Shown here: piece by piece, positions 6,090-47,908 of the stretch
Layout of the letters: each line of letters starts with the position of its first letter
Position numbering within the stretch: position 1 is the stretch's first letter
Notes under the pieces: model-generated
What the model saw: only the letters and a program-made list of their open reading frames with translations
What the model was told of the DNA's origin: nothing
Databases searched by the model: none
Made by a program: the position numbers and the translations under genes
Virus record (IMG/VR): IMGVR_UViG_3300035703_000005
Coordinates: 62,001-126,000 of that record
Reading direction: 5' to 3' (one strand)
DNA length: 64,000 bases

Positions 6090-6304
6090 CAGAGTTTTCC
6101 TCCCACAACTCCTTCATATTTAACAGAATTTGATTCACTCCAACCTTCTTGTTTACCTTTAAGATAAAATCGTGTTGCAGAAATGCAAATTTCTTCAGTA
6201 AGAGAAGTCACAAGACATTTTCCTTCTTTATTATAAGAGTCCCAAGTACCCCACCTTTGTTGTTCAACCCTGAAAGTATCATCAATCCAAGTATAATCAG
6301 TCAT
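6089..6304 (-). CDS. hypothetical phage protein
   Basis: Ends YEGVVGGKL. Confidence 0.6.
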   Translation of the reverse strand: MTDYTWIDDTFRVEQQRWGTWDSYNKEGKCLVTSLTEEICISATRFYLKGKQEGWSESNSVKYEGVVGGKL

Positions 6305-6669
6305 TAGATTTAATAGTCAAAGTGTAATCTTTTTTCTTGAGTTTATGTCTGTCCAAAAACCTATTCACATGTTCTTGACACTCAAACCAACAAACTTTAT
6401 TATCCTTACCTTCTTTTACTTCCAAACGAAAAGTAAAATTTTGATAGGGAAATTTTTCACCAATGGATGAAATCATGATTACCTTGGTTGTTCACGACTT
6501 TGAGTATAGACCAAGTTCATGAGCATGTCAAGGACTTCCTGACATTCTCCATAAGTTTTTTTATCAACATTATAAATTTGTTGATATTTTCTCATTGCAA
6601 TCATCATTAATTGATATTGTTCTCTGGTAAAATTCATTAGTCGTAAATATTTTGTTCTTGTTGCCTTTT

Positions 6670-36053: not shown

Positions 36054-36126
36054 TGCTCGATGAGAGGATCGAACTCTCCTGGGACCGATTATGAGTCGGG
36101 TGCTTTCACCAGATAGCTAATCGAGC
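36054..36126 (-). tRNA. tRNA with CAT anticodon (probably Ile2)
   Basis: Cloverleaf; CCGA-CTCATAA-TCGG arm. Confidence 0.85.
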
Positions 36127-36127
36127 T

Positions 36128-37240
36128 TTATTCAAATGTCCATTGTGGATGCGATGATGAAGACCAATACCAATATTTTTTGTGTTTTATCCAAGGAAGT
36201 GGGTGACTATAATCACAAATTGGTTCATATAAATTATTAATACCCATTGCATCTGATGTCTGTTTATTTTGATATCCCCTTAGAATATTAATTCTTTTGG
36301 AGTATGTAGATTGGTATGTGCCATAAAATAATTCAGAATTTACACATATTAACTGTTCAATGATTGATTTATCCAATCCCTGATAACAATCATAAAAATC
36401 ACTAAAAAAATAAATGTTTTTATGAGTTCCCAATTTATCAAAAAATTTTAAATCTTTTTCATCAGTAGATATGTATAGAGGTTTATTTTCTTTAAAAAGA
36501 TATTTTATCGAAAATAGTAATTTTTCTGGTGTAGATACTGATGAAATATCTTCAGATTTGAGGTCTAAGAAATCAGTTCTACGAATATGAACAGAATCAT
36601 ATGGGCCCAAAATATCGTATACTTTTTTAGATATATCTAAAAATTTAGAGTCATATAAGAGACAAGAATTTATTTTTTGTTTTAGTTGATTTCGTTTAAA
36701 AGAATTACCGGGATAAATTGAATACCAATATTGTGCAAAAAGATTAGCTTCAAAATGCAAAAATTTTTCATCAAAATTTAAATTTATAATTTCAGTTCTT
36801 TTACCACAAAATTTAGAAAAATCTAAATCACTTTCAATTTGTCCACAAAATAAAACAATTTGAGTATCCGCAAGTCTACAATTTTCAGCAAATGTAATTT
36901 TTTTTAAATCATTAATACAATTTTCTATATTTCCAGTATATGAATATATGCATTCTGAAGTTTCTTTTTTTTCTATCTTAGAAAAAAGTTCTGAAAATTC
37001 AGGAACATCATAAAAATCAATACAATTAAAATTAGAATAAATGGATTCTTTGTTTAAGAATTTCAATATGTCAACAAAATGTTCTTTTCCAAATCCTTCT
37101 GATACATCAAAACACCAAAAATTTGGAGGAATAATTAAGGTTCTTCCTGTTATTTCACTCAAGGCCAAAGCGACCTCTAAACTCATTAATATATTAATTA
37201 GTCCTGCTTGGTGAGTTGAAAATGATATATATTTACTCAT
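36128..37240 (-). CDS. O-fucosyltransferase-like protein
   Basis: AGLIN, VHIRRTDF, YISTDE, EQLIC, GTYQSTYS. Confidence 0.75.
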   Translation of the reverse strand: MSKYISFSTHQAGLINILMSLEVALALSEITGRTLIIPPNFWCFDVSEGFGKEHFVDILKFLNKESIYSNFNCIDFYDVPEFSELFSKIEKKETSECIYSYTGNIENCINDLKKITFAENCRLADTQIVLFCGQIESDLDFSKFCGKRTEIINLNFDEKFLHFEANLFAQYWYSIYPGNSFKRNQLKQKINSCLLYDSKFLDISKKVYDILGPYDSVHIRRTDFLDLKSEDISSVSTPEKLLFSIKYLFKENKPLYISTDEKDLKFFDKLGTHKNIYFFSDFYDCYQGLDKSIIEQLICVNSELFYGTYQSTYSKRINILRGYQNKQTSDAMGINNLYEPICDYSHPLPWIKHKKYWYWSSSSHPQWTFE

Positions 37241-37248
37241 TTAAAAAA

Positions 37249-37419
37249 TTATGGTGCTTCATTATTCAAATCAGTATACATGCATATAAGTTCATCGTCT
37301 ACAGGGATCATTACATAAGTATTTTTTCCGTTAGTTATACCTATATGTTCTCCGTTTTCCACTCTTCCAATCATTTCATCCCAACGTTCTTGAAATTGTT
37401 CCACCGTGTAGATTTCCAT
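37249..37419 (-). CDS. Phd/YefM-like small protein
   Basis: TVEQFQERWDEMIGRVENGEHIGIT..V. Confidence 0.5.
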   Translation of the reverse strand: MEIYTVEQFQERWDEMIGRVENGEHIGITNGKNTYVMIPVDDELICMYTDLNNEAP

Positions 37420-37438
37420 AGTTGTTGTATTTATTAAG

Positions 37439-37512
37439 TCGGAACGATAGGACTTGAACCTACGACTTCCAGCTCCCAAAGCAGGCGCTCTACCAAACTG
37501 AGCTACGTTCCG
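37439..37512 (-). tRNA. tRNA-Pro(TGG)
   Basis: Cloverleaf. Confidence 0.93.
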
Positions 37513-37841
37513 TTTTTCTTTTCATCTTTGGTTGAATGTACATACATTATACCCAATGTAGGAACGACTGTCAACCCCATACCAATGATAAAAATTGATA
37601 TGGGATTATTTAGTACAAATTCCACAAACTTAAATACCAAATTAGTATGTGGTTCCATTCCTTTTATGCAAATATTCCTGGAATATAATTAATTCTTTTA
37701 CTAATTTCATCAAGAATAACACCATATTCTTTGAATCTTCTATCACCTGCGATGAAACGTCGTTGTCTCATCCAAACAGCATCTGCTAAAAGTTTTAGTT
37801 CGTAATCCGAAAAATCTTTGAACCTTTCCATTGAGTAGCTC

Positions 37842-38876
37842 CTATCTAACGTGATGTCCACCGAACATGTATCGCATACCATTTAAAATTTTGGCTGCGA
37901 AAGTGCCCAGATTGCGTGAATTAAATCTTTCATAAAGCGCAGTGGTGATGACAGGAGCGGGAACCCCCAGGTCCACAGCGGCAGTAACTGTCCAGCGACC
38001 CTCACCGCTGTCGGATACACCTCCAGAGAATTGTTTAAGCTCAGTATTGCCGCGTAACACATCAGCAGTAAGATCCAATAACCAAGAACCAACAACGCTA
38101 CCACGACGCCATAACTCAGCCACCTCAGCAACGTCAATATCATAACAGTAACTTTCTGGGTCTGCCATTGGGGCAACCTCTGCATCCCCTTCCCTAACAT
38201 ACTTGGCACCTGCATTGGCATTTTTTAGGATATTGAATCCTTCTGCATATGCTTGCATTATACCATACTCAATTCCATTATGAACCATCTTTACGAAATG
38301 TCCTGCACCAGGTCCGCCACAATGCAACCAGCCATACTCTGCAGAAGTTATGTCTGAGTCAAATTGAGTCCTGGGGGCAGCGTCGATTCCTGGAGAGAGG
38401 GCATTAAAAATACGCGAACAAGTGGCGACTGCAGTATCTCCGCCACCAACCATAAGACAGTATCCACGATCCAAACCATAAACACCGCCGCTAGTGCCGC
38501 AATCAATATATTGGATACCCATCTTTGCCAAACGTTCTGATCTTTTCCTACTGTCTTTAAAATTGCTATTGCCATGATCAATAATAATATCTCCTTCACC
38601 ACAAAATCGTAGTAACTCATTGATAGTCTCCTCTACTGTTTCTGCAGGTACAACCATTTGGAAAATTCCTGGTTGTGTTCCTCCTTTATTATTCTGTTTA
38701 ACTACTTTAACAAGATTTTCAATAGTAGTTGCAACTCCATTAATATATCCCTTTTCATAAGCTTCTTGAGCCTTTTCATAATTTCTCCTATAACCCCAAA
38801 CTTCTATTCCTGATTTCATCATACGACGGGACATTCCTTCTCCCATCCTTCCAAGTCCAATTAATCCTACTTTCAT
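37842..38876 (-). CDS. gnd: 6-phosphogluconate dehydrogenase (short type)
   Basis: GLGRMG, GTSGG, GHFVKMVHNGIEY, DSGEGRW, FGGH. Confidence 0.96.
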   Translation of the reverse strand: MKVGLIGLGRMGEGMSRRMMKSGIEVWGYRRNYEKAQEAYEKGYINGVATTIENLVKVVKQNNKGGTQPGIFQMVVPAETVEETINELLRFCGEGDIIIDHGNSNFKDSRKRSERLAKMGIQYIDCGTSGGVYGLDRGYCLMVGGGDTAVATCSRIFNALSPGIDAAPRTQFDSDITSAEYGWLHCGGPGAGHFVKMVHNGIEYGIMQAYAEGFNILKNANAGAKYVREGDAEVAPMADPESYCYDIDVAEVAELWRRGSVVGSWLLDLTADVLRGNTELKQFSGGVSDSGEGRWTVTAAVDLGVPAPVITTALYERFNSRNLGTFAAKILNGMRYMFGGHHVR

Positions 38877-39079
38877 TCAACCCTCCCAAGATTCGTATTG
38901 TTCTCTAAAATATCTATCAACTTTATTTAAATCATCAAGATGAATATCACACATATAATTATGATCGTCACACCACTGTAAGGCAAATGCGTGAAATCTC
39001 TCTTGTTTTTTTATTGTAGGAACACCATAAGTTCTAGCAAAAGAAGACATTATGAAATGCCAACACATATTTTCTGGTT

Positions 39080-39739
39080 TCATTTTTGATCTTTCATAAC
39101 TTGTTCCCAGTCCTTCTGGAATAACTCAAGACCCTTATCAGTCATAATGTTCTTATACATTGACCAAAATACAATGGGAGGAATTGTAACTACATCTGCA
39201 CCACAAAGAGCAGACTGTTCTACCTGTCTTACATCACGAAGAGATGCTGCAAGAATTTGTGTAGATGTTCCCGAATAATCAAATGCTTTACGAATGTTCT
39301 TAATGAGTTCGATTCCATCAATCGAATTATCCATCCAACGACCAACAAAAGGTGAAATGAATGTTGCTCCTGATTTAGATGCAAGAATTGCCTGAGCGAC
39401 TGAGAATACAAGAGTTACATTGACTTGAATTCCTTTATCAGTCAAAAATTTACAAGCCTTAAGTCCTTCTACTGTACAAGGAACTTTAATTGTAACTGCT
39501 GGTGCAATTGTATAAAATTGTTGTGCTTGTGAAAGCATTTCTTCTGCAGTATCGGCAACAACTTCTGCAGAAATACTTTCTAGTTTTGAAAAAGACTTTG
39601 ATATTTCTTCGATAACTTCATGAAGTTGTCTACCACTTTTAAGAATTAAAGTGGGATTTGTAGTAACTCCATCCAATAGTCCAGTCTCGTATGCTGGACT
39701 AATCATTGAAACATCTGCGGTATCTAAAAAAATCTTCAT
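39080..39739 (-). CDS. talC: transaldolase (TalC/Fsa type)
   Basis: FLDTA, GVTTNPT, IKVP, SPFVGR. Confidence 0.95.
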   Translation of the reverse strand: MKIFLDTADVSMISPAYETGLLDGVTTNPTLILKSGRQLHEVIEEISKSFSKLESISAEVVADTAEEMLSQAQQFYTIAPAVTIKVPCTVEGLKACKFLTDKGIQVNVTLVFSVAQAILASKSGATFISPFVGRWMDNSIDGIELIKNIRKAFDYSGTSTQILAASLRDVRQVEQSALCGADVVTIPPIVFWSMYKNIMTDKGLELFQKDWEQVMKDQK

Positions 39740-40671
39740 ATAGTACTCCTATTGTGGATAAGCGTTATTTAATCCCCAAGTTATAAAAAGCATGATTGAT
39801 CCAAATATACAAATTGTAGAGAAAGTTAGTCTGTGCATCTTACCCCCCACTACCGTTTCTGAAACCTATCATATATCCAATCAATAATCCACACATAAAT
39901 GACACAAACATGTAAAGGACATGAGACGTAAACTCAATAAATTCAATCCATTCTGTATTCTTCATCGTCCTCATAAGTAGATGGTTCTTCAAAAAGTTCA
40001 TCCATTTTTTGTTGTAGAACTCTTTGTTGCAGTTCTTCTAAATCCTCTTCTGTAAGAATTATCATTTGTCCTTAAGTAATTCCTCTATTCGTTTACGCAT
40101 GTTTGTACTTTCTTGTTTCATATAATCTCTGAGAGAATATCCTCTTTGACCTTTCATAATACAAGTTCCTTGATAGAACATTGTAACGGCAAATACCAAT
40201 AATAAAACTATACCAATTATTTCAGAGTAATGTTGAGCCATGGCAGTAAAGGTGGAATGATACCAATTAATCGGAGAAGTCCCTCAGCAAATAAAGCAAG
40301 AACCACCCAACCAACACACATAGAAATAATGGAAGCATTCCTATTGTGCCTTCGTATAGAAGCATCAATCATCTCCTGTACTTCAGAACGACTTACGGAT
40401 TCAGCATTATCAATATCCATTTTTATCATCTCCAAGATATTTCGATAAAGGATCTTTTTTGGTTTTGACAATCTCACACGCTCTTTTATAGAACATATTA
40501 TCCGTATTACCAGAGGCTTCAAAAGTAGCCTTGATCTTCACCCAATTACCGTAGGTGTGGTCGTCCATGAGGTTATTAACTTGTACATAATTATATAATA
40601 ATCACGGAAGCTATAACGTCAACCTTATGTGTTCATATCGTAACACTGATTAAGCAAATATTAAAATAAAA

Positions 40672-40756
40672 CGGAAAGGAGAGGATTCGAACCTCCGGAT
40701 GCTCTCACATCGACTGTTTTCAAGACAGTTGCCTTAAACCACTCGGCCACCTTTCC
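40672..40756 (-). tRNA. tRNA-Ser(TGA)
   Basis: Class II cloverleaf. Confidence 0.93.
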
Positions 40757-40759
40757 ATA

Positions 40760-40848
40760 CGGAGAATGTTGGATTCGAACCAACGGAGAAGCATAAACTC
40801 CTCAAGAACTTAGCAGGTTCCCGCCTTAAACCACTCGGCCAATTCTCC
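40760..40848 (-). tRNA. tRNA-Ser(GCT)
   Basis: Class II cloverleaf. Confidence 0.93.
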
Positions 40849-41099
40849 TATCGGATTTCGAAATCCAGTTTACGAACCTTACGAGCTCGTCTGGACTCCT
40901 GGAAAGCAAGTTCAGATGGACTGAACACACTATCCCTTTTGTTTTCTTTAATTGAGTTTAACATAACTACTTGATTTAAGTCAACAGCAGTGATAGTGTC
41001 TCCTTTTACAAGTGTCATATTATCACACCCACAGCATACCGATTTAGTTGGATGCGACTCCAACTCGGTGTTACACACTTTGCATCTTACTCTTAACAT
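40848..41099 (-). CDS. Zn-binding hypothetical protein
   Basis: CKVC...CGC. Confidence 0.6.
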   Translation of the reverse strand: MLRVRCKVCNTELESHPTKSVCCGCDNMTLVKGDTITAVDLNQVVMLNSIKENKRDSVFSPSELAFQESRRARKVRKLDFEIR

Positions 41100-41115
41100 T
41101 GTCTTATACCTTTAA

Positions 41116-41637
41116 TTAATCTTCAGTTGTTTCTTCTACTTGAATTTCAGATTCTTCTTGTTCTTCAATTTCTTGAACTTCTTCTTTTGCGAGTCCAGGA
41201 GAGGATTCAAGATACGATCTCAACATCCAAACAAATTTTCCATGAGACTCATTTAGATCATCTATAAGATTTGAAGTTGCTCTGGACTTCTGAGCATCAG
41301 CTTCCTCAGCAACTTCAGTAAATAGATCACACAAATCTTGATTTGATTTTAACAGATCTCTTACCATTTTATGGCAATCTGTTGTACTTTGTCCAGTTTT
41401 GACTTTGGAAACTTCTACAATTCTTTCTAAACTATTAAGTGGTTTTACATTTAGAAACCTCATGTGTTCAGAGATACGATCGATCTCCTCAAACATTGTT
41501 TCATACTGATCACCAAAAAGAGTATGAAGTTGTGGAAAATCTTCTCCAATTACATTCCAATGATACGCCCATGTCTTATGAAATAAGACAAATAGGGATG
41601 CTTGTGCATCACTTAGTAGTTTAAAAAGTGTTTCCAT
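41116..41637 (-). CDS. dps: Dps mini-ferritin with an acidic tail
   Basis: HWNV.G.DF..LH..F...Y...D..SE, K.VWML; late promoter at 41658-41665. Confidence 0.92.
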   Translation of the reverse strand: METLFKLLSDAQASLFVLFHKTWAYHWNVIGEDFPQLHTLFGDQYETMFEEIDRISEHMRFLNVKPLNSLERIVEVSKVKTGQSTTDCHKMVRDLLKSNQDLCDLFTEVAEEADAQKSRATSNLIDDLNESHGKFVWMLRSYLESSPGLAKEEVQEIEEQEESEIQVEETTED

Positions 41638-41667
41638 TATACAGATACTTTTTCAAGTATTTATAAG

Positions 41668-41739
41668 TGGGCAATATCGGATTCGAACCAATGACCAACT
41701 GCGTGTAAAGCAGCTGCGCTACCGCTGCGCTAATCGCCC
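41668..41739 (-). tRNA. tRNA-Val(TAC)
   Basis: Cloverleaf. Confidence 0.93.
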
Positions 41740-41740
41740 G

Positions 41741-41948
41741 TGGGGGTGGTGAGATTCTGTCATACTCACAATCGGGAAGGTTACACTGACAACGTATTTC
41801 CCAACACTTAGGTTCTTCTTGGTGAGAAGTTCTATACCTTTGATTTCTCAACGATACAGCGGGCACCACCCCTAACCTATTACATTATCCCGTGAGTAAC
41901 CACAAGGATTGTTCTGTCACACCCAGAGAACTCCCGTCGAAGTTCTCA
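41741..41948 (-). ncRNA. multi-stem structured RNA, possibly the manA motif
   Basis: GGGGUGGUG/CACCACCCC closing stem, internal stems, repeated UGACAGAA, ACUCAC/GUGAGU complement. Confidence 0.55.
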
Positions 41949-41950
41949 AG

Positions 41951-42022
41951 AGCGGAATACCGGATTCGAACCGGTGACATCCAACTTGGAAGGATGGCGT
42001 TCTACCACTGAACTAATTCCGC
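41951..42022 (-). tRNA. tRNA-Gly(TCC)
   Basis: Cloverleaf, U73. Confidence 0.93.
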
Positions 42023-42061
42023 AATAAGACAATTATAGAGTAGTTGAGTATAATTGTCAAG

Positions 42062-42144
42062 TGCTCCAGAGAAGATTTGAACTTCCACGCTTTTTAAGGC
42101 GGCGGATTCTAAGTCCGCTGTGTCTACCGTTCCACCACTGGAGC
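42062..42144 (-). tRNA. tRNA-Leu(TAG)
   Basis: Class II cloverleaf. Confidence 0.93.
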
Positions 42145-42262
42145 TAATTTTTAATTGATGAGTAGTGAGTGCCCACCACTCGCAGAAGACACTTTCTGCA
42201 ATTTTCACTGCATTAGAGGGCAGTGATGATATGAAAGAATCGGAAATTTCCAACCCTTCCAA

Positions 42263-42335
42263 CTCCCCCAGTCCGACTCGAACGAACAACCCCAGAGTTA
42301 ACAGCTCCGTGCTCTGCCAATTGAGCTATAGGGGA
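42263..42335 (-). tRNA. tRNA-Asn(GTT)
   Basis: Cloverleaf, U1-A72. Confidence 0.9.
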
Positions 42336-42386
42336 ATATAGGGGAAAGGAGAGCTCTTGGGCGAACCCGCAGGATCACTTTCCCAG

Positions 42387-42459
42387 TGGAGAATAGGAGA
42401 CTCGAACTCCTAACCTTTGCCTTGCAAAGGCACTGCTCTACCAATTGAGCTAATCCCCC
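42387..42459 (-). tRNA. tRNA-Ala(TGC)
   Basis: Cloverleaf with G3.U70. Confidence 0.94.
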
Positions 42460-42462
42460 ATT

Positions 42463-42537
42463 TGGTGGCGGGGGGTGGAATTGAACCACCTACCTGAAGC
42501 TTATGAGACTTCTGTGCAACCGTTACACTTCCCCACT
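42463..42537 (-). tRNA. tRNA-Met(CAT), initiator-like
   Basis: A1xC72 mismatch, encoded CCA. Confidence 0.85.
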
Positions 42538-42540
42538 ATA

Positions 42541-42776
42541 AGGCCGCTTTTCACGGCACCGTAACACTTTCTTTACAGGGCTGTTATCACCCCGTCTCTC
42601 TATACTAGGGCAGTAGTCTTACTGCGAGAGAATGCAACAATGTTGTTTGCGTTTGTTTTTTGTCCCGTCAACAGATACAACCTTACCACCTCGTCGAAAC
42701 CTTGGCAACCCCTAGTTATGGAGTTGTGGGGAGTCGAACCCCAGTCCGAAGCAACAGACTTTGCATCCTCTTGAAC
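42541..42776 (-). ncRNA. ssrA: two-piece (circularly permuted) tmRNA
   Basis: Acceptor piece ends GGACTGGGGTTCGACTCCCCACAACTCCA at 42719; 6-nt spacer; coding piece starts GGGGTTG...GGTTTCGAC at 42712; tag ANNIVAFSRSKTTALV* at 42600-42650. Confidence 0.92.
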
Positions 42777-42783
42777 ATAGTAT

Positions 42784-42812
42784 ATAGTATACTAAAATTA
42801 TTCAGTTGTCAA
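42784..42812 (-). promoter_or_regulatory. sigma70-type promoter of the tmRNA
   Basis: TTGACA-N17-TACTAT. Confidence 0.7.
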
Positions 42813-42813
42813 G

Positions 42814-42900
42814 CGGAGAGAGAGGGATTTGAACCCTCGGTGAAGTTACCCCCACACAGACTTTCCAGGTCTGCTCCTTAAGCCACTCGGACACCTCTCC
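42814..42900 (-). tRNA. tRNA-Ser(GGA)
   Basis: Class II cloverleaf. Confidence 0.93.
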
Positions 42901-42937
42901 AACATAAACATCATACCATAATTACGGAAGATGTCAA

Positions 42938-43011
42938 CACTCTCTGCAGGATTTGAACCTGCGACACATCGGTTCGTAGCCGATTGCTCTAGTCCACTGA
43001 GCTAAGAGAGT
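42938..43011 (-). tRNA. tRNA-Arg(ACG)
   Basis: Cloverleaf. Confidence 0.93.
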
Positions 43012-43014
43012 AGG

Positions 43015-43086
43015 CGAAGGGCCAGAGACTTGAACTCTGATCTTTGGTTTTGGAGACCAAGATGCTACCAATTGCACCAACCCAAC
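43015..43086 (-). tRNA. tRNA-Trp(CCA) with two U.U acceptor-stem mismatches
   Basis: Intact D, anticodon and T arms; acceptor GTTGGGT/GCCCTTC. Confidence 0.75.
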
Positions 43087-43087
43087 A

Positions 43088-43164
43088 TGGTATCCGTGAG
43101 AGGATTTGAACCTCCAACAAATAGATCCTTAGTCTATTGCCTCTTCCAATTGGGCTACACGGAC
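43088..43164 (-). tRNA. tRNA-Leu(AAG) with a short variable loop
   Basis: ATAGA-CTAAGGA-TCTAT; A73; encoded CCA. Confidence 0.8.
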
Positions 43165-43167
43165 AAA

Positions 43168-43839
43168 CTATAAGATTCCGAAAAGTTTACATCTTTTACG
43201 AATAGCATTATCAGAAACTCCAAACATTTTACCAATAGAAACTAAAGAATAAGAAGCAAGAAGTTTTTGAAGTTCTTCTTTAGATACTTCAAATTTTCTT
43301 TTTCTTGGAATTGAAATTCTAGGTTTTTTAACCCTTTTTACATTCCTACCAGCAAATGTATCAGTTTGACTATTGCAGTTTGGACATAAAAATCTTAGAT
43401 TTTCTAATCTATTATCATTAGGAATTCCATTTATATGATCTAAAACCATAGATAAAGGATTTCCATTCCATTTAGGTTCCAATCCACAATTGAAGCAAGA
43501 ATAAGAAATAATATTTTCTTGTATTAGTCTTGCCCTAATAACACTCCTAGAAGTGCTACTATTTTCAACAAATAGTATATTATTTGGAATTTTATTTTTA
43601 CTAGGACCAAATTTTTTTCCTTTATTGGAATCAAGTCCTTTTTTTATATGAGAAGTATCAATTTTTTCATATTCTATTCTTCTTTTTAGTGTGTTTATAT
43701 TAGAACCTTGAGAAAATATATTAAGTTTTCTCAAAATCTCAGAATAAGAAGAACTATCAGAAACAATTAATTCTAGTTGTTTTTTTGGAACAGACCATAA
43801 GATACTTCTTTTTTTTCTGGATTTATTTTGATTTGACAT
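43168..43839 (-). mobile_element. free-standing HNH endonuclease inside the tRNA array
   Basis: CFNC...LDHINGIPNDNRLENLRFLCPNC; late promoter at 43860-43867. Confidence 0.9.
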
Positions 43840-43911
43840 AGTAATTATTCTTTATTAGTTATTTATAACACATAAAGTCAAAAAATACTAGTCTTACCAT
43901 TATAAATCCAA

Positions 43912-43986
43912 ATCCCAAGGCAGGCTTCGAACCTGCAAAAATTCTCCTTCAAAGGGAGATAGCTTTACCAGTTTGCTCACTTGGGA
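43912..43986 (-). tRNA. tRNA-Gln(TTG)
   Basis: TCTCC-CTTTGAA-GGAGA; U1-A72. Confidence 0.85.
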
Positions 43987-43992
43987 ATTAGG

Positions 43993-44068
43993 AGTTCAGG
44001 GTGGGATTTGAACCCACGGTGAAAGAAGTTTTGCAGACTTCCGCATTCGACCACTCTGCCACCTGAAC
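43993..44068 (-). tRNA. tRNA-Cys(GCA)
   Basis: Cloverleaf, U73. Confidence 0.9.
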
Positions 44069-44101
44069 ATTTGAACTATCTGGAATTTCCAGATAATTGA
44101 G

Positions 44102-44172
44102 AGCCCAATAACAGAATTGAACTGTTCTCTGCAGTTTACTAAACTGCTGCATCACCACAATGCTTATCGGGC
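44102..44172 (-). tRNA. tRNA-Thr(AGT)
   Basis: GCAGT-TTAGTAA-ACTGC. Confidence 0.85.
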
Positions 44173-44174
44173 GG

Positions 44175-44246
44175 GGTGCCATATGAGATTTGAACTCATC
44201 TACCCAGTTTCACAAACTGGTTCCTTAACCACTAGGATAATGGCAC
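44175..44246 (-). tRNA. tRNA-His(GTG)
   Basis: CCAGT-TTGTGAA-ACTGG. Confidence 0.88.
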
Positions 44247-44247
44247 A

Positions 44248-44319
44248 AGGCAGTGGGTAGAATTGAACTACCGACATAGAGGGTATGAATCTCTTGTTCT
44301 ACCACTGAACTACACTGCC
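44248..44319 (-). tRNA. tRNA-Met(CAT), elongator-like
   Basis: Cloverleaf, loop TTCATAC. Confidence 0.85.
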
Positions 44320-44323
44320 AAGT

Positions 44324-44413
44324 AGGGAGAGGGTGGAATCGAACCACCATTGCCAATGGACGGAATCGAACCGTCTCTGATACCGTCGTATCCACCATCC
44401 AAGGTGCTCTCCC
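44324..44413 (-). ncRNA. tRNA-like RNA with two T-arms and no 7-nt anticodon loop
   Basis: GGGAGAG/CTCTCCC stem; GACGG-TTCGATT-CCGTC and GGTGG-TTCGATT-CCACC. Confidence 0.7.
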
Positions 44414-44426
44414 ATATCGTAGGTGT

Positions 44427-44509
44427 ATCATTTGAGAGGATTCGAACCTCCATTGCCGCCTCCAAAACGCAAGTGCTATGGCGGAGTGTTACCGTTACAC
44501 TACAAATGA
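44427..44509 (-). ncRNA. tRNA-like RNA (Gln-like body) with a 19-nt anticodon loop
   Basis: Intact acceptor, D and T arms; CCGCC-N19-GGCGG. Confidence 0.7.
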
Positions 44510-44725
44510 TATCCTTACGTTGCTTACTCCTAGATTCTACTCATCAGATTTACTTGTTGGACCTAATCGTTGGAATACTCGCTGCGTTCAACTTATTACC
44601 CTGTCTCGACTTGAACGAGACTGTTTTCTATAGCCTTTGCGTTTGTTAGTAATAAGCATACTGACAGGTTTCTTTTACCTTTCAGTTTTCCGTTCAACCC
44701 AACTTTGGAATAAAGTTTGGGCAAG

Positions 44726-44797
44726 TGGAACCGACAAGATTTGAACTTGTGACCGCTCGGTTATCAGCCGAGTGCTCTACCACTGAGCTACGATTCC
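44726..44797 (-). tRNA. tRNA-Ile(GAT)
   Basis: Cloverleaf. Confidence 0.93.
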
Positions 44798-44917
44798 ATC
44801 AAGGTAGGAGTCGATATCAACAACCTACCAGTTTCAGTTTTCGGACTGAAAAACCTATCACTAACCAACCGAAGTTTCATAACGGAGAAAGTGAATCTCC
44901 GTGACCATAAGGTCAAG

Positions 44918-44991
44918 AGGGAACAATCGGATTTGAACCGATAACACCATGATCTTCAATCATGTGCTCTACCAATTGGAGCTATGTTCCC
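44918..44991 (-). tRNA. tRNA-Phe(GAA)
   Basis: Cloverleaf. Confidence 0.92.
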
Positions 44992-44994
44992 AAG

Positions 44995-45068
44995 TCCAGA
45001 TGAAAGGATTTGAACCTCCGACTTCTCCGCCCCAAACGGAGCGCTCTACCAAACTGAGCTACACCTGG
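44995..45068 (-). tRNA. tRNA-Pro(TGG), second divergent copy
   Basis: CTCCG-TTTGGGG-CGGAG. Confidence 0.9.
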
Positions 45069-45069
45069 A

Positions 45070-45144
45070 TGGTAGTCCTAACGGGATTTGAACCCGTGTC
45101 TTCACTGTGAAAGAGTGATGTCCTCACCACTAGACGATAGGACC
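45070..45144 (-). tRNA. tRNA-Glu(TTC)
   Basis: Cloverleaf with encoded CCA. Confidence 0.93.
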
Positions 45145-45323
45145 AGATGGGAGGGGTATCCCACACGAAGTTACTTACGGATTACGCTTCGTAGCCTTAT
45201 GAATCCTGCCATCATCCGATGGTGGCTAGAAATCCCTCCCCAATTCCAGTTATTACTACAACATTCTTCTGCAAACTGGCAACCTCTGAAGAATGCGTGG
45301 AGATTCGTACTGATGATCTCCAA

Positions 45324-45397
45324 CGACCCATAGGGGATTTGAACCCCTGATCTCCTCTTGGACAGAGAGGCGCGTTAGACCGCTACGCTAATGGGCC
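45324..45397 (-). tRNA. tRNA-Asp(GTC)
   Basis: Cloverleaf, G73. Confidence 0.92.
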
Positions 45398-45444
45398 AAG
45401 AGCACAATCCACTACCAATGGTATCATTGGGCAGATCATGCAGT

Positions 45445-45534
45445 GAGAGAGGAGGGAATTGAACCCCCGATGGTTCTTATGTACGTGTTTTACAGACACG
45501 GACTACACATATTGCCGACAGTAGCCACTCTCCC
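45445..45534 (-). tRNA. tRNA-Tyr(GTA) with an enlarged D arm
   Basis: CGTGT-CTGTAAA-ACACG; long variable region. Confidence 0.8.
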
Positions 45535-45929
45535 TAGATTTTATACTGCAAATAATTTTCACCAAGATTGATTGAGTTTTTATTATCTTTTATGATGTCT
45601 TTGGGAATAAGATACTTATCACCATCAGCAGTTAGTATGAATAACTGGTCATAAAAGATTTCAGTATTGAGTTTATTGACAAAATTAGATTTACTATTTC
45701 CACCAGTAATCCTCAATCCCACTACATATTTTCCACTAGAAGATTTGGAGTTAGTTGTCTTTACTTGTATTTTTTGTAATCCAAGTTCAGGAAACTCAAC
45801 AATCAAATCGTAATCTTGACTATCTGTTAATGGGATAGAAACAGTATATCCAAGACCACAAAAGTGGGCAATACAAATACCCAATCCAACATCACCTTGT
45901 TTCTTGGTGTTTTTGCAGTTATGGAACAT
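45534..45929 (-). mobile_element. free-standing PD-(D/E)XK endonuclease (group I intron-associated type)
   Basis: KKQGD.G...VSIPLTD...YDLIV...KIQVKT; late promoter at 45955-45962. Confidence 0.85.
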
Positions 45930-45978
45930 ATCTTATAACGGAGTAATACTCTGTTATTTATAAGAGTTATGTTCCATA

Positions 45979-46051
45979 TGGGTCTGGTGGGACTCGAACC
46001 CACGATATACTGGTTAAAAGCCAGGTGCATTAGCCGCTATGCAACAGACCC
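45979..46051 (-). tRNA. tRNA-Lys(TTT)
   Basis: Cloverleaf. Confidence 0.92.
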
Positions 46052-46239
46052 AAATAATATAGGATAAATATTCGGTTGTCTAGGTTCGGTGTGGTCTCTC
46101 TCAACCACTCGATTAGAATACCACCATTTGAACTCTGATTGGAGGATGGTGGACACTTGGGAAACTGTCACAAGCAACAAAAAAGGGGAGGAAACTTTTG
46201 GTTTCTCTCCCCTTCTTTTGCTTTTATGGATTAAACATC

Positions 46240-46341
46240 TTACATATGTCTTTCCATATCCGCAAACAGGGGAGCACCCTCAATATGCCAATAGCGGCAA
46301 TCGAGAATACTAAACTGTTTTGTGGGCATTGGGTAAGACAT
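46240..46341 (-). CDS. 33-aa peptide with its own late promoter and terminator
   Basis: MSYPMPTKQFSILDCRYWHIEGAPLFADMERHM; TATAAATA at 46363-46370; hairpin at about 46178-46215. Confidence 0.55.
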   Translation of the reverse strand: MSYPMPTKQFSILDCRYWHIEGAPLFADMERHM

Positions 46342-46394
46342 TGTTTTCGACCTAAGTGTTTTTATTTATAAGACTTTTTTGTTAAAAAGTCAAG

Positions 46395-46467
46395 CACCCC
46401 TGGTAGGATTTGCACCCACGACCAACGGCTTAGAAGGCCGATGCTCTATCTACTGAGCTACAGGGGC
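46395..46467 (-). tRNA. tRNA-Arg(TCT)
   Basis: Cloverleaf; T loop TGCAAAT. Confidence 0.9.
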
Positions 46468-46534
46468 ATGTTTGGTATGAAGTTATTATAGTGGGGGAAG
46501 GGTTTTCTGTCAACCCCTCCCTCCTATTTAATTG

Positions 46535-47470: not shown

Positions 47471-47908
47471 TCAATGAGCTGATGTTCCATGAAAGTAATC
47501 CTTCCTGTAGTAACGACCGAGTACATTGCTATTGTAGTACCGAGGTTCCCCAGTGTCAAGGGCCTCTGTCAGGACATTATTTAGGAACAACTGACGGGTC
47601 TCCTCATAATTCGTTTTACCTACAGTATCGTGTAGAGAAATTATGAATCTTCTGAACTTATCTTTTCCGTATTTCTTAATATCATCTTTGAGTTCTGGAC
47701 AGGATCCGTAATACTTTTTCCAATCAGACTCCTGTTTAGATCTTCGAGTTGCACCCTTTTTCTTTCGGAAGCTCCAGAAATACTTTCTCCCAAAGTAACT
47801 CCGATTATTTTCAAGGCAGTCAATACGATAAACAAAACCAAAATGATCCTGAATATGATCTGACTCAAAAACCTCTCCATTATAAGTCCAAGGGTTTTCA
47901 TAGCTCAT
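47471..47908 (-). CDS. GIY-YIG endonuclease (T4 endonuclease II-like)
   Basis: GFVYRI...YFGRK...ESDWKKYYGS...YYN. Confidence 0.8.
   Translation of the reverse strand: MSYENPWTYNGEVFESDHIQDHFGFVYRIDCLENNRSYFGRKYFWSFRKKKGATRRSKQESDWKKYYGSCPELKDDIKKYGKDKFRRFIISLHDTVGKTNYEETRQLFLNNVLTEALDTGEPRYYNSNVLGRYYRKDYFHGTSAH

What the first reader, a model, noticed from the sequence alone, without database searches (positions are those of the whole stretch)
44802..44915. Potential double-pseudoknot RNA between tRNA-Phe and tRNA-Ile
Seen: the hairpins ACGGAGA-UUCACUU-UCUCCGU and UUCAGU-CCGAAA-ACUGAA flank a central segment containing both AGUGA (pairs with UCACU) and UUCGG (pairs with CCGAA). Terminal stems are UGACC/GGUCA and GGUAGG/CCUACC. 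Inference: a compact tertiary fold, candidate ribozyme or aptamer.
Basis: partly seen in the sequence, partly recalled or inferred. Interest (0 to 1): 0.6.

Follow-up and report, generated by a model that had tools for sequence, protein, structure and literature searches.

The report
Ultra-conserved small RNA in cyanophage tRNA array
The 119-base spacer between two tRNA genes of a large freshwater cyanophage encodes a real, strongly conserved hairpin-rich non-coding RNA that matches no family in Rfam release 15, but the proposed double pseudoknot is at best half supported and its function is unknown.

Summary
The host genome is a complete 249-kb cyanophage record with 29 called tRNAs.

The element recurs in about 30 loci from viral and metagenome collections, some of them duplicates. 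They fall into three lineages: a main clade, L013 and L167.

Its 74-nt core differs at no more than 3 positions across the main clade. The flanking tRNA genes there average only 82% identity. The spacer as a whole averages 95.8%.

Compensatory changes support hairpins P1, P3 and P4. P2 shows only G-C to G.U changes. G.U pairs place the RNA on the tRNA strand.

- **Pseudoknot UUCGG:CCGAA:** natural variants break it in two lineages with no compensation. All the variation fits a small central hairpin instead.
- **Pseudoknot UCACU:AGUGA:** never broken, but it never covaries. A nested alternative helix that competes with P2 explains it equally well.

There is no Rfam match, and the 5' end cannot adopt the HDV/theta topology. 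No host copy was found in the genomes searched. No coding frame, promoter or terminator lies inside the element.

Best reading (inferred, not shown): a small structured RNA cut out of the tRNA precursor by RNase Z and RNase P, acting through its invariant loops on an unknown partner. The closest known analogues are T4 RNAC/RNAD. Expression could not be checked.

The parts
44798..44916 (-). Whole 119-nt inter-tRNA cassette: P1, P2, central linker, P3, P4.
   Evidence: Homologues in about 30 loci.
44902..44915 (-). P1, UGACC-UUAU-GGUCA. A trailer hairpin that follows (C)UUG directly after the tRNA. Generic to this array's long spacers.
   Evidence: A4-U13 becomes C-G in L013. The same (C)UUG/UGG plus hairpin design follows most tRNAs that precede a long spacer, and three tRNAs in L013.
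44882..44902 (-). P2, a 6-bp stem (a seventh pair only in this window) with loop L2 UUCACUU at 44889-44895.
   Evidence: The only stem change is G-C to G.U, in L013 and L167. UCACUU of L2 (positions 23-28) is invariant; position 22 is A in L013.
44852..44881 (-). Central linker (spacer positions 36-65). It holds UUCGG (44869-44873), AGUGA (44858-44862), the candidate central hairpin Pc AACU/GGUU (44863-44876) and the invariant GUGAUAGG (44854-44861).
   Evidence: Between positions 36 and 63, only 38, 45, 46, 51 and 55 vary. Positions 64-66 vary and carry indels.
44832..44851 (-). P3, a 7-bp stem UUUCAGU/ACUGAAA with invariant loop L3 CCGAAA at 44839-44844.
   Evidence: Four pairs change on both sides in L013 and all still pair.
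44803..44829 (-). P4, basal stem GGUAGG/CCUACC with a conserved apical hairpin GUUG-AUAU-CGAC (44810-44821). It ends 4-5 nt before the next tRNA.
   Evidence: The basal stem is rewritten with pairing kept in L066, L167 and L013.
44917..44991 (-). tRNA-Phe(GAA), upstream neighbour. No CCA is encoded.
44725..44797 (-). tRNA-Ile(GAU), downstream neighbour. Its 5' end would set the element's 3' end through RNase P cleavage.
46485..46513 (-). Perfect sigma-70-type promoter TTGACA-17-TATAAT at the head of this part of the tRNA array.
   Evidence: 12 of 12 consensus matches. It is a consensus match only, not shown to be active.

Best explanation
The spacer is a gene for a small structured non-coding RNA carried as a cassette inside the phage's polycistronic tRNA operon.

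The RNA is transcribed on the tRNA strand. I infer that it is released by the enzymes that mature the neighbouring tRNAs. RNase Z or RNase E would cut after the tRNA-Phe discriminator. RNase P would cut at the 5' end of tRNA-Ile.

The terminal hairpins P1 and P4 are generic bracket hairpins of this array. They probably insulate the cargo and protect its ends.

The cargo is a 74-nt core: P2, a weakly structured linker and P3. The invariant loops UUCACUU and CCGAAA and the invariant GUGAUAGG segment most likely form a binding surface for an unknown protein or RNA partner. The RNA may also switch between P2 and an alternative helix.

Shown here: the element exists, it is conserved, three of its hairpins covary (P2 shows only wobble changes), and it lies on the minus strand. 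Inferred: processing, stability and action in trans. The UCACU:AGUGA tertiary pairing is possible. The UUCGG:CCGAA pairing is not required.
For: **Conservation.** Across 11 main-clade loci the spacer averages 95.8% pairwise identity. tRNA-Phe averages 81.8% and tRNA-Ile 81.5%. Protein genes nearby align at only 66-69% and most tRNAs at 74-90%.

**Selection rather than recent spread.** Conserved and diverged segments interleave at a 5-10-nt scale in L013, L066 and L167. Loops and linker stay fixed while stems are rewritten with pairing kept.

**Covariation.** Pairs changed on both sides: 1 in P1 and 4 in P3. None of 500 shuffles reached the observed values. P4 basal stems differ completely between lineages yet all fold.

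**Strand.** G.U pairs in P2, P3 and P4 would be A.C mismatches on the plus strand, so the RNA is on the tRNA strand.

**Context.** The element sits in a 29-tRNA array that also carries manA RNA and a tmRNA. A perfect sigma-70 promoter lies upstream, and no promoter or terminator lies inside the element. In all three lineages it ends 4-5 nt before a tRNA 5' end.

**Precedent.** T4 RNAC and RNAD come from the T4 tRNA region and have unknown roles (PMC3014915). The E. coli 3'ETS-leuZ spacer acts as an sRNA sponge (PMC8383071).
Against:
- No partner is known.
- The family is narrow: about 20 IMG/VR contigs in three lineages.
- All compensatory changes in P1 and P3 come from one lineage, L013.
- Complete related phages that carry the same tRNA-Ile lack the element, so it is dispensable.
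- Its constant position just upstream of a tRNA also fits a cis-acting leader role.
- The cassette occupies different contexts in L013 and L167, so lateral spread contributes to its distribution.
Confidence: 0.55

Rival explanations
1. A cis-acting leader element that assists or gates folding and RNase P processing of the tRNA immediately downstream. It would have no life of its own after cleavage.
For: In all three lineages P4 ends 4-5 nt before a tRNA 5' end: Ile, Phe, or an intron-split Leu. In L167 no tRNA adjoins its 5' side. Many long spacers of this array end in a hairpin just before the next tRNA.
Against: The downstream tRNA differs between lineages. Other spacers doing the same generic job are not conserved. 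Phages with the identical tRNA-Ile lack the element. Near-invariance of 74 nt goes far beyond what an insulating hairpin needs.
Confidence: 0.2
2. A DNA-level or mobile cassette, such as a homing-endonuclease target or a recombination module. Its identity across phages would reflect recent lateral spread rather than RNA function.
For: HNH, PD-(D/E)XK and SegE-type GIY-YIG endonuclease ORFs are interleaved with the tRNAs. The cassette sits in different tRNA contexts in L013 and L167. Conservation stops sharply at the tRNA borders.
Against: Strand-specific G.U pairs and compensatory stem changes indicate selection on an RNA. Within one cassette, P4 diverges heavily in L066 while the adjacent core differs at only 2 positions (C46A, U87A).
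Confidence: 0.1
3. One reading: a compact double-pseudoknot fold that acts as a self-cleaving ribozyme or a ligand-binding aptamer.
For: Both loop-linker complementarities exist (p = 0.007 together). Loops and partners are highly conserved. Phage tRNA-adjacent theta ribozymes are a precedent (PMC10879173).
Against: The UUCGG:CCGAA pairing is broken in L066 and L167 without compensation. No ribozyme or riboswitch covariance model hits at E<=10. Positions 1-15 form a local hairpin, which is incompatible with HDV P1. There is no expression platform. A78 alone would have to span a 5-bp stem across the shallow groove, which is sterically strained (inference from standard H-type pseudoknot geometry).
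Confidence: 0.07
4. A decayed tRNA or tRNA-like remnant with no present function.
For: P3 with G71-C80 and loop UCCGAAAA loosely resembles a T-arm. AGUGAUAGG loosely resembles a D-loop. Both are resemblances by eye only.
Against: ARAGORN and the Rfam tRNA model do not call it. The order of the arms is not that of a tRNA. A remnant would not be more conserved than working tRNAs.
Confidence: 0.03

Closest known systems
Bacteriophage T4 RNAC and RNAD (species 1 and 2 RNAs) from the T4 tRNA region
   Same: Small non-tRNA RNAs encoded inside the tRNA cluster of a T4-type myovirus, on the tRNA strand. Their biological role is unknown (PMC3014915).
   Different: No sequence similarity. blastn of the element against 50,697 phage records found nothing at E<=1 (T4 being among those records is my assumption). 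Processing and stability are shown for T4 but not here.
E. coli 3'ETS-leuZ, a tRNA-spacer-derived sponge RNA (Lalaouna 2015, as reviewed in PMC8383071)
   Same: A transcribed spacer of a polycistronic tRNA precursor that is released during tRNA maturation and acts in trans.
   Different: That RNA is an external 3' spacer that pairs with RyhB and RybB. Here the spacer is internal, encoded by a phage, far more structured, and has no known target.
Theta (minimal HDV-like) ribozymes next to phage tRNAs (PMC10879173)
   Same: A structured RNA placed directly after a phage tRNA 3' end. A pseudoknotted fold was proposed for it.
   Different: No nested P1/P1.1/P2/P3 topology is possible. No Rfam HDV-family hit. 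In L167 no tRNA precedes the element. Theta ribozymes are reported only from gut phages.
manA and wcaG RNAs of T4-like cyanophages (Rfam RF01745, RF01761)
   Same: Conserved structured RNAs of unknown mechanism in cyanomyoviruses. In this window manA also lies between two tRNAs.
   Different: Unrelated sequence and fold. Those families are widespread, while this one is confined to a few phage lineages that appear to be freshwater.

Membership tests
HDV-like / theta ribozyme | The 5'-terminal strand (P1) pairs with a strand downstream of P3, giving a nested double pseudoknot with P1.1 and a catalytic C in J4/2. | tested here: not met
   Positions 2-6 pair locally with 11-15, only 4 nt apart. 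No other downstream complement exists. No Rfam HDV-type model hits at E<=10.
HDV-like / theta ribozyme | The cleavage site lies within about 5 nt of a tRNA 3' end. | tested here: inconclusive
   Met in the window and in L013. Not met in L167, where the nearest upstream tRNA ends 160 nt away.
Hammerhead, twister, twister-sister, pistol and hatchet ribozymes | A match to the family covariance model, including its conserved core nucleotides. | tested here: not met
   cmscan of 44400-46500 at E<=10 lists no ribozyme family over 44798-44916. GUGAUAG does not fit the hammerhead CUGANGA box (by reading).
Self-cleaving ribozyme (any class) | Site-specific self-scission of the transcript. | not testable with these tools
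   This needs an in vitro transcription and cleavage assay.
tRNA / tRNA-like structure | A cloverleaf detectable by ARAGORN or the Rfam tRNA model. | tested here: not met
   Searches give no call over the spacer. The weak YrlA hit at 44725-44847 (17.6 bits against a gathering score of 69) rests on tRNA-Ile.
tRNA-cluster small stable RNA (T4 RNAC/RNAD kind) | Encoded within the tRNA cluster on the tRNA strand. | tested here: met
   The strand is fixed by G.U pairs.
tRNA-cluster small stable RNA (T4 RNAC/RNAD kind) | Accumulates as a discrete processed RNA. | not testable with these tools
tRNA-cluster small stable RNA (T4 RNAC/RNAD kind) | Sequence homology to T4 RNAC or RNAD. | tested here: not met
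   No blastn match in the phage collection at E<=1. T4's presence in that collection is assumed, not checked.
Riboswitch | An aptamer followed by an expression platform in a 5' UTR. | tested here: not met
   The element is followed within 4-5 nt by a tRNA in all lineages. No terminator or ribosome-binding site lies inside it.
H-type pseudoknot L2:b (UCACU:AGUGA) | Pairing kept through compensatory change. | tested here: inconclusive
   100% of cells pair, but 4 of 5 pairs never vary and 1 shows only A-to-G wobble. The same pairs also belong to a nested alternative helix.
Pseudoknot a:L3 (UUCGG:CCGAA) | Pairing kept across relatives. | tested here: not met
   Three unpaired cells in two lineages, with all changes on one side. 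Duplex energy falls from -4.5 to -0.6 kcal/mol.

The most novel reading that the evidence does not exclude
The core is a bistable or pseudoknotted RNA device: P2 versus the alternative helix 23-34/46-59, or P2 plus the L2:b pseudoknot. Its invariant loops would bind a ligand or a host factor and so gate maturation of the adjoining tRNA, or titrate a host RNA-processing or defence protein. That would be a natural switch or decoy built into a viral tRNA operon.
Probability: 0.08. Interest if true: 0.85.

Novelty: new member of a known kind. Interest (0 to 1): 0.45.

Why it matters
Phage tRNA arrays are usually read as codon-supply or anti-defence cargo, and their spacers are ignored. Here one spacer is held more constant than the tRNAs around it. 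That means the array carries an additional RNA function under strong selection.

T4's RNAC and RNAD have lacked a function for fifty years. A second, unrelated and sharply defined example in cyanophages gives a compact test object of 74 nt with clear mutational targets. It could be used to ask what such RNAs do.

The generic hairpin brackets on every long spacer also suggest rules for how viral tRNA operons are laid out for processing.

Tried and rejected
- **Rfam:** nothing over the spacer at gathering thresholds or at E<=10.
- **Isolate phages:** blastn against 50,697 phage records found nothing.
- **Pattern demanding both pseudoknot partners:** outside the family it returned only chance hits that lack P2 and P3.
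- **Covariance model R1:** no second copy in the 249-kb genome, in other fetched arrays, or in five large related records. Weak hits were a tRNA-Ser and AT-rich noise.
- **Host origin:**
  - The pattern is absent from 185,579 prokaryote genomes.
  - R1 found only chance-level hits in 151 genomes of the order of the best psbA-matching Cyanobium.
  - Host tRNA-Ile matches do not extend into the element, so derivation from the rrn spacer is rejected.
- **Small peptide:** the 15- and 30-codon frames are not kept. L013 has a 2-nt indel and lacks the first AUG, and L167 has lost the second.
- **Promoter or terminator inside the element:** none.
- **K-turn or C/D-box reading:** rejected, because the CUGA lies in a covarying stem.
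- **Fremin 2023 candidate list:** the supplement is not held. Overlap with one of its 8,495 IMG/VR motifs cannot be excluded.

Full report
**Where it lies**

The window is bases 62001-126000 of a complete 248,835-bp IMG/VR virus record. It is a T4-type cyanophage:

- Rfam finds PhotoRC-II, wcaG, manA and a two-piece cyanobacterial tmRNA.
- The psbA product is 94% identical to that of a Cyanobium genome.
- A transaldolase gene and a ferritin-like gene are present.

ARAGORN tRNA genes, all on the minus strand, between 36054 and 46467. HNH, PD-(D/E)XK and SegE-type GIY-YIG endonuclease ORFs are interleaved with them. A perfect TTGACA-17-TATAAT promoter lies on the minus strand at 46513-46485.

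The finding is the 119-nt spacer 44798-44916 between tRNA-Phe and tRNA-Ile.

**Observation**

All quoted hairpins and complementary segments are present on the minus strand.

- The minus strand folds better than all 200 shuffles (z = -3.4).
- Both loops find a 5-nt complement in a shuffled linker with p = 0.007.
A15 is counted in two hairpins. The seventh P2 pair is peculiar to this window.

**Relatives**

The isolate-phage collection holds no match. Pattern scans of IMG/VR and of metagenome contigs gave about 30 loci, some of them the same contig in two collections. They form three lineages.

1. A main clade in which the element always lies between tRNA-Phe and tRNA-Ile.
2. L013, where the order is Ile-element-Phe.
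3. L167, where the element lies 160 nt after tRNA-Asn. It is 4 nt before a tRNA-Leu(CAA) that is split by an insert of about 277 nt.

Covariance model R1 finds no second copy in the genome and none in the other fetched arrays. Five large related records, two of them at least 90% complete and carrying the same tRNA-Ile, also lack it.

The element was not found in prokaryote genomes. Host tRNA-Ile flanks are unrelated to it.

**Conservation**

Within the main clade the spacer averages 95.8% pairwise identity. tRNA-Phe averages 81.8% and tRNA-Ile 81.5%. Neighbouring protein genes align at 66-69%. The 74-nt core differs at no more than 3 positions between any two main-clade members.

At 18% divergence, two or fewer changes in 73 nt has a probability near 7e-5 (my binomial estimate).

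In L013, L066 and L167 the changes cluster in stems and short linkers. UCACUU, GUGAUAGG, CCGAAA and G47G48 never change. This fine interleaving argues for purifying selection rather than recent transfer of a block.

**Secondary structure**

| Helix | What varies |
|---|---|
| P1 | A-U becomes C-G in L013 |
| P2 | Only G-C to G.U |
| P3 | Four pairs change on both sides in L013; all still pair |
| P4 basal stem | GGUAGG/CCUACC here; GGUAAGA/UCUUACU in L066; AAAUAAGAAG/CUUCUUAUUU in L167; a 6+7-bp stem in L013. All fold. The apical GUUG-NNNN-CGRC hairpin is kept in the window clade, L013 and L167 but not in L066 |

Several G.U pairs would be A.C on the other strand, so the RNA is on the tRNA strand.

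P1 and P4 are not special to this element. Nearly every long spacer of the array begins with (C)UUG or UGG plus a hairpin right after the tRNA. Many end in a hairpin 3-5 nt before the next tRNA.

**The pseudoknots**

*UUCGG:CCGAA.* Position 46 is C, U or A, and position 45 is U or C. The loop CCGAAA is invariant. This leaves three unpaired cells in two lineages, and duplex energy drops from -4.5 to -0.6 kcal/mol.

RNAalifold instead places 45 and 46 in the loop of a small hairpin, AACU/GGUU. The G51A change in L167 turns its U.G pair into U-A. A cUUCGg mini-hairpin fits as well. I therefore reject this pseudoknot as a required helix. Only G47G48 and C73C74 remain invariant.

*UCACU:AGUGA.* It is paired in every sequence. 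A55G gives a wobble, and U22A in L013 would add a sixth pair. No pair changes on both sides, and alone its chance probability is 0.14.

The same five pairs also head a nested helix, 23-34 with 46-59, that competes with P2. In the commonest variant that fold scores -15.1 kcal/mol against -14.4 for P2+Pc+P3. It is weaker in this window (-12.5) and in L167 (-6.4). The data cannot separate a pseudoknot, a switch and conservation for another reason.

**What it is not**

- No Rfam family matches at E<=10.
- The HDV/theta topology is impossible because the first 15 nt form a local hairpin. Theta ribozymes are described in PMC10879173.
- It is not a tRNA.
- It is not coding, because the frames are not kept.
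- It contains no promoter or terminator.

**Mechanism proposed**

The element is a small RNA released by the tRNA-maturing nucleases, bracketed by protective hairpins. It would act through its invariant loops on an unknown partner. This is inferred from position, anatomy and two precedents:

- T4 RNAC and RNAD, whose roles are unknown (PMC3014915).
- The E. coli tRNA-spacer sponge 3'ETS-leuZ (PMC8383071).

**Verdict**

This is a real structured RNA that is probably undescribed. Rfam release 15 has no match, but overlap with the Fremin 2023 IMG/VR candidate list could not be checked. Its distribution is narrow and its sequence constraint is striking.

Noticed in passing
window 45441-45534 (-): An uncalled type-II tRNA-Tyr(GUA), with acceptor GGGAGAG/CUCUCUC, loop CUGUAAA and a long variable arm. 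ARAGORN missed it, and Rfam gave only a weak tmRNA hit. It is homologous to a called tRNA-Tyr in L064. Its 5' end abuts the stop codon of the PD-(D/E)XK ORF.
   Followed up: partly
window 44425-44510 (-): ARAGORN reports 'tRNA-???' with a two-base anticodon. The sequence has an 8-bp acceptor-like stem and a 19-nt insert inside the CCGCC/GGCGG anticodon stem. The Rfam tRNA score is 49 bits. The same gene is present in L009.
   Followed up: no
window 41739-41946 and 42543-42798 (-): manA RNA lies between tRNA-Gly and tRNA-Val rather than in a 5' UTR. A two-piece cyanobacterial-type tmRNA is also embedded in the array.
   Followed up: no
window 36054-46467 (-): Spacer design rule: almost every long inter-tRNA spacer starts with (C)UUG or UGG plus a hairpin directly after the tRNA. 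Many also end with a hairpin 3-5 nt before the next tRNA. L013 shows the same AUUGCCC-NNNN-GGGCA trailer after three tRNAs.
   Followed up: partly
window 43168-43839, 45534-45929, 47471-47908 (-): HNH, PD-(D/E)XK and SegE-like GIY-YIG endonuclease ORFs are interleaved with the tRNA genes, much as seg genes are in the T4 tRNA region.
   Followed up: no
L167 6304-6655: A tRNA-Leu(CAA) gene split in the anticodon loop by an insert of about 277 nt. The 5' half is near 6304-6340 and the 3' half near 6614-6655. No Rfam intron model matched.
   Followed up: partly
window 46485-46513 (-): A perfect sigma-70 consensus promoter (12 of 12) sits just upstream of tRNA-Arg, and a second 10-of-12 site at 46054-46082 sits upstream of tRNA-Lys.
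   Followed up: no
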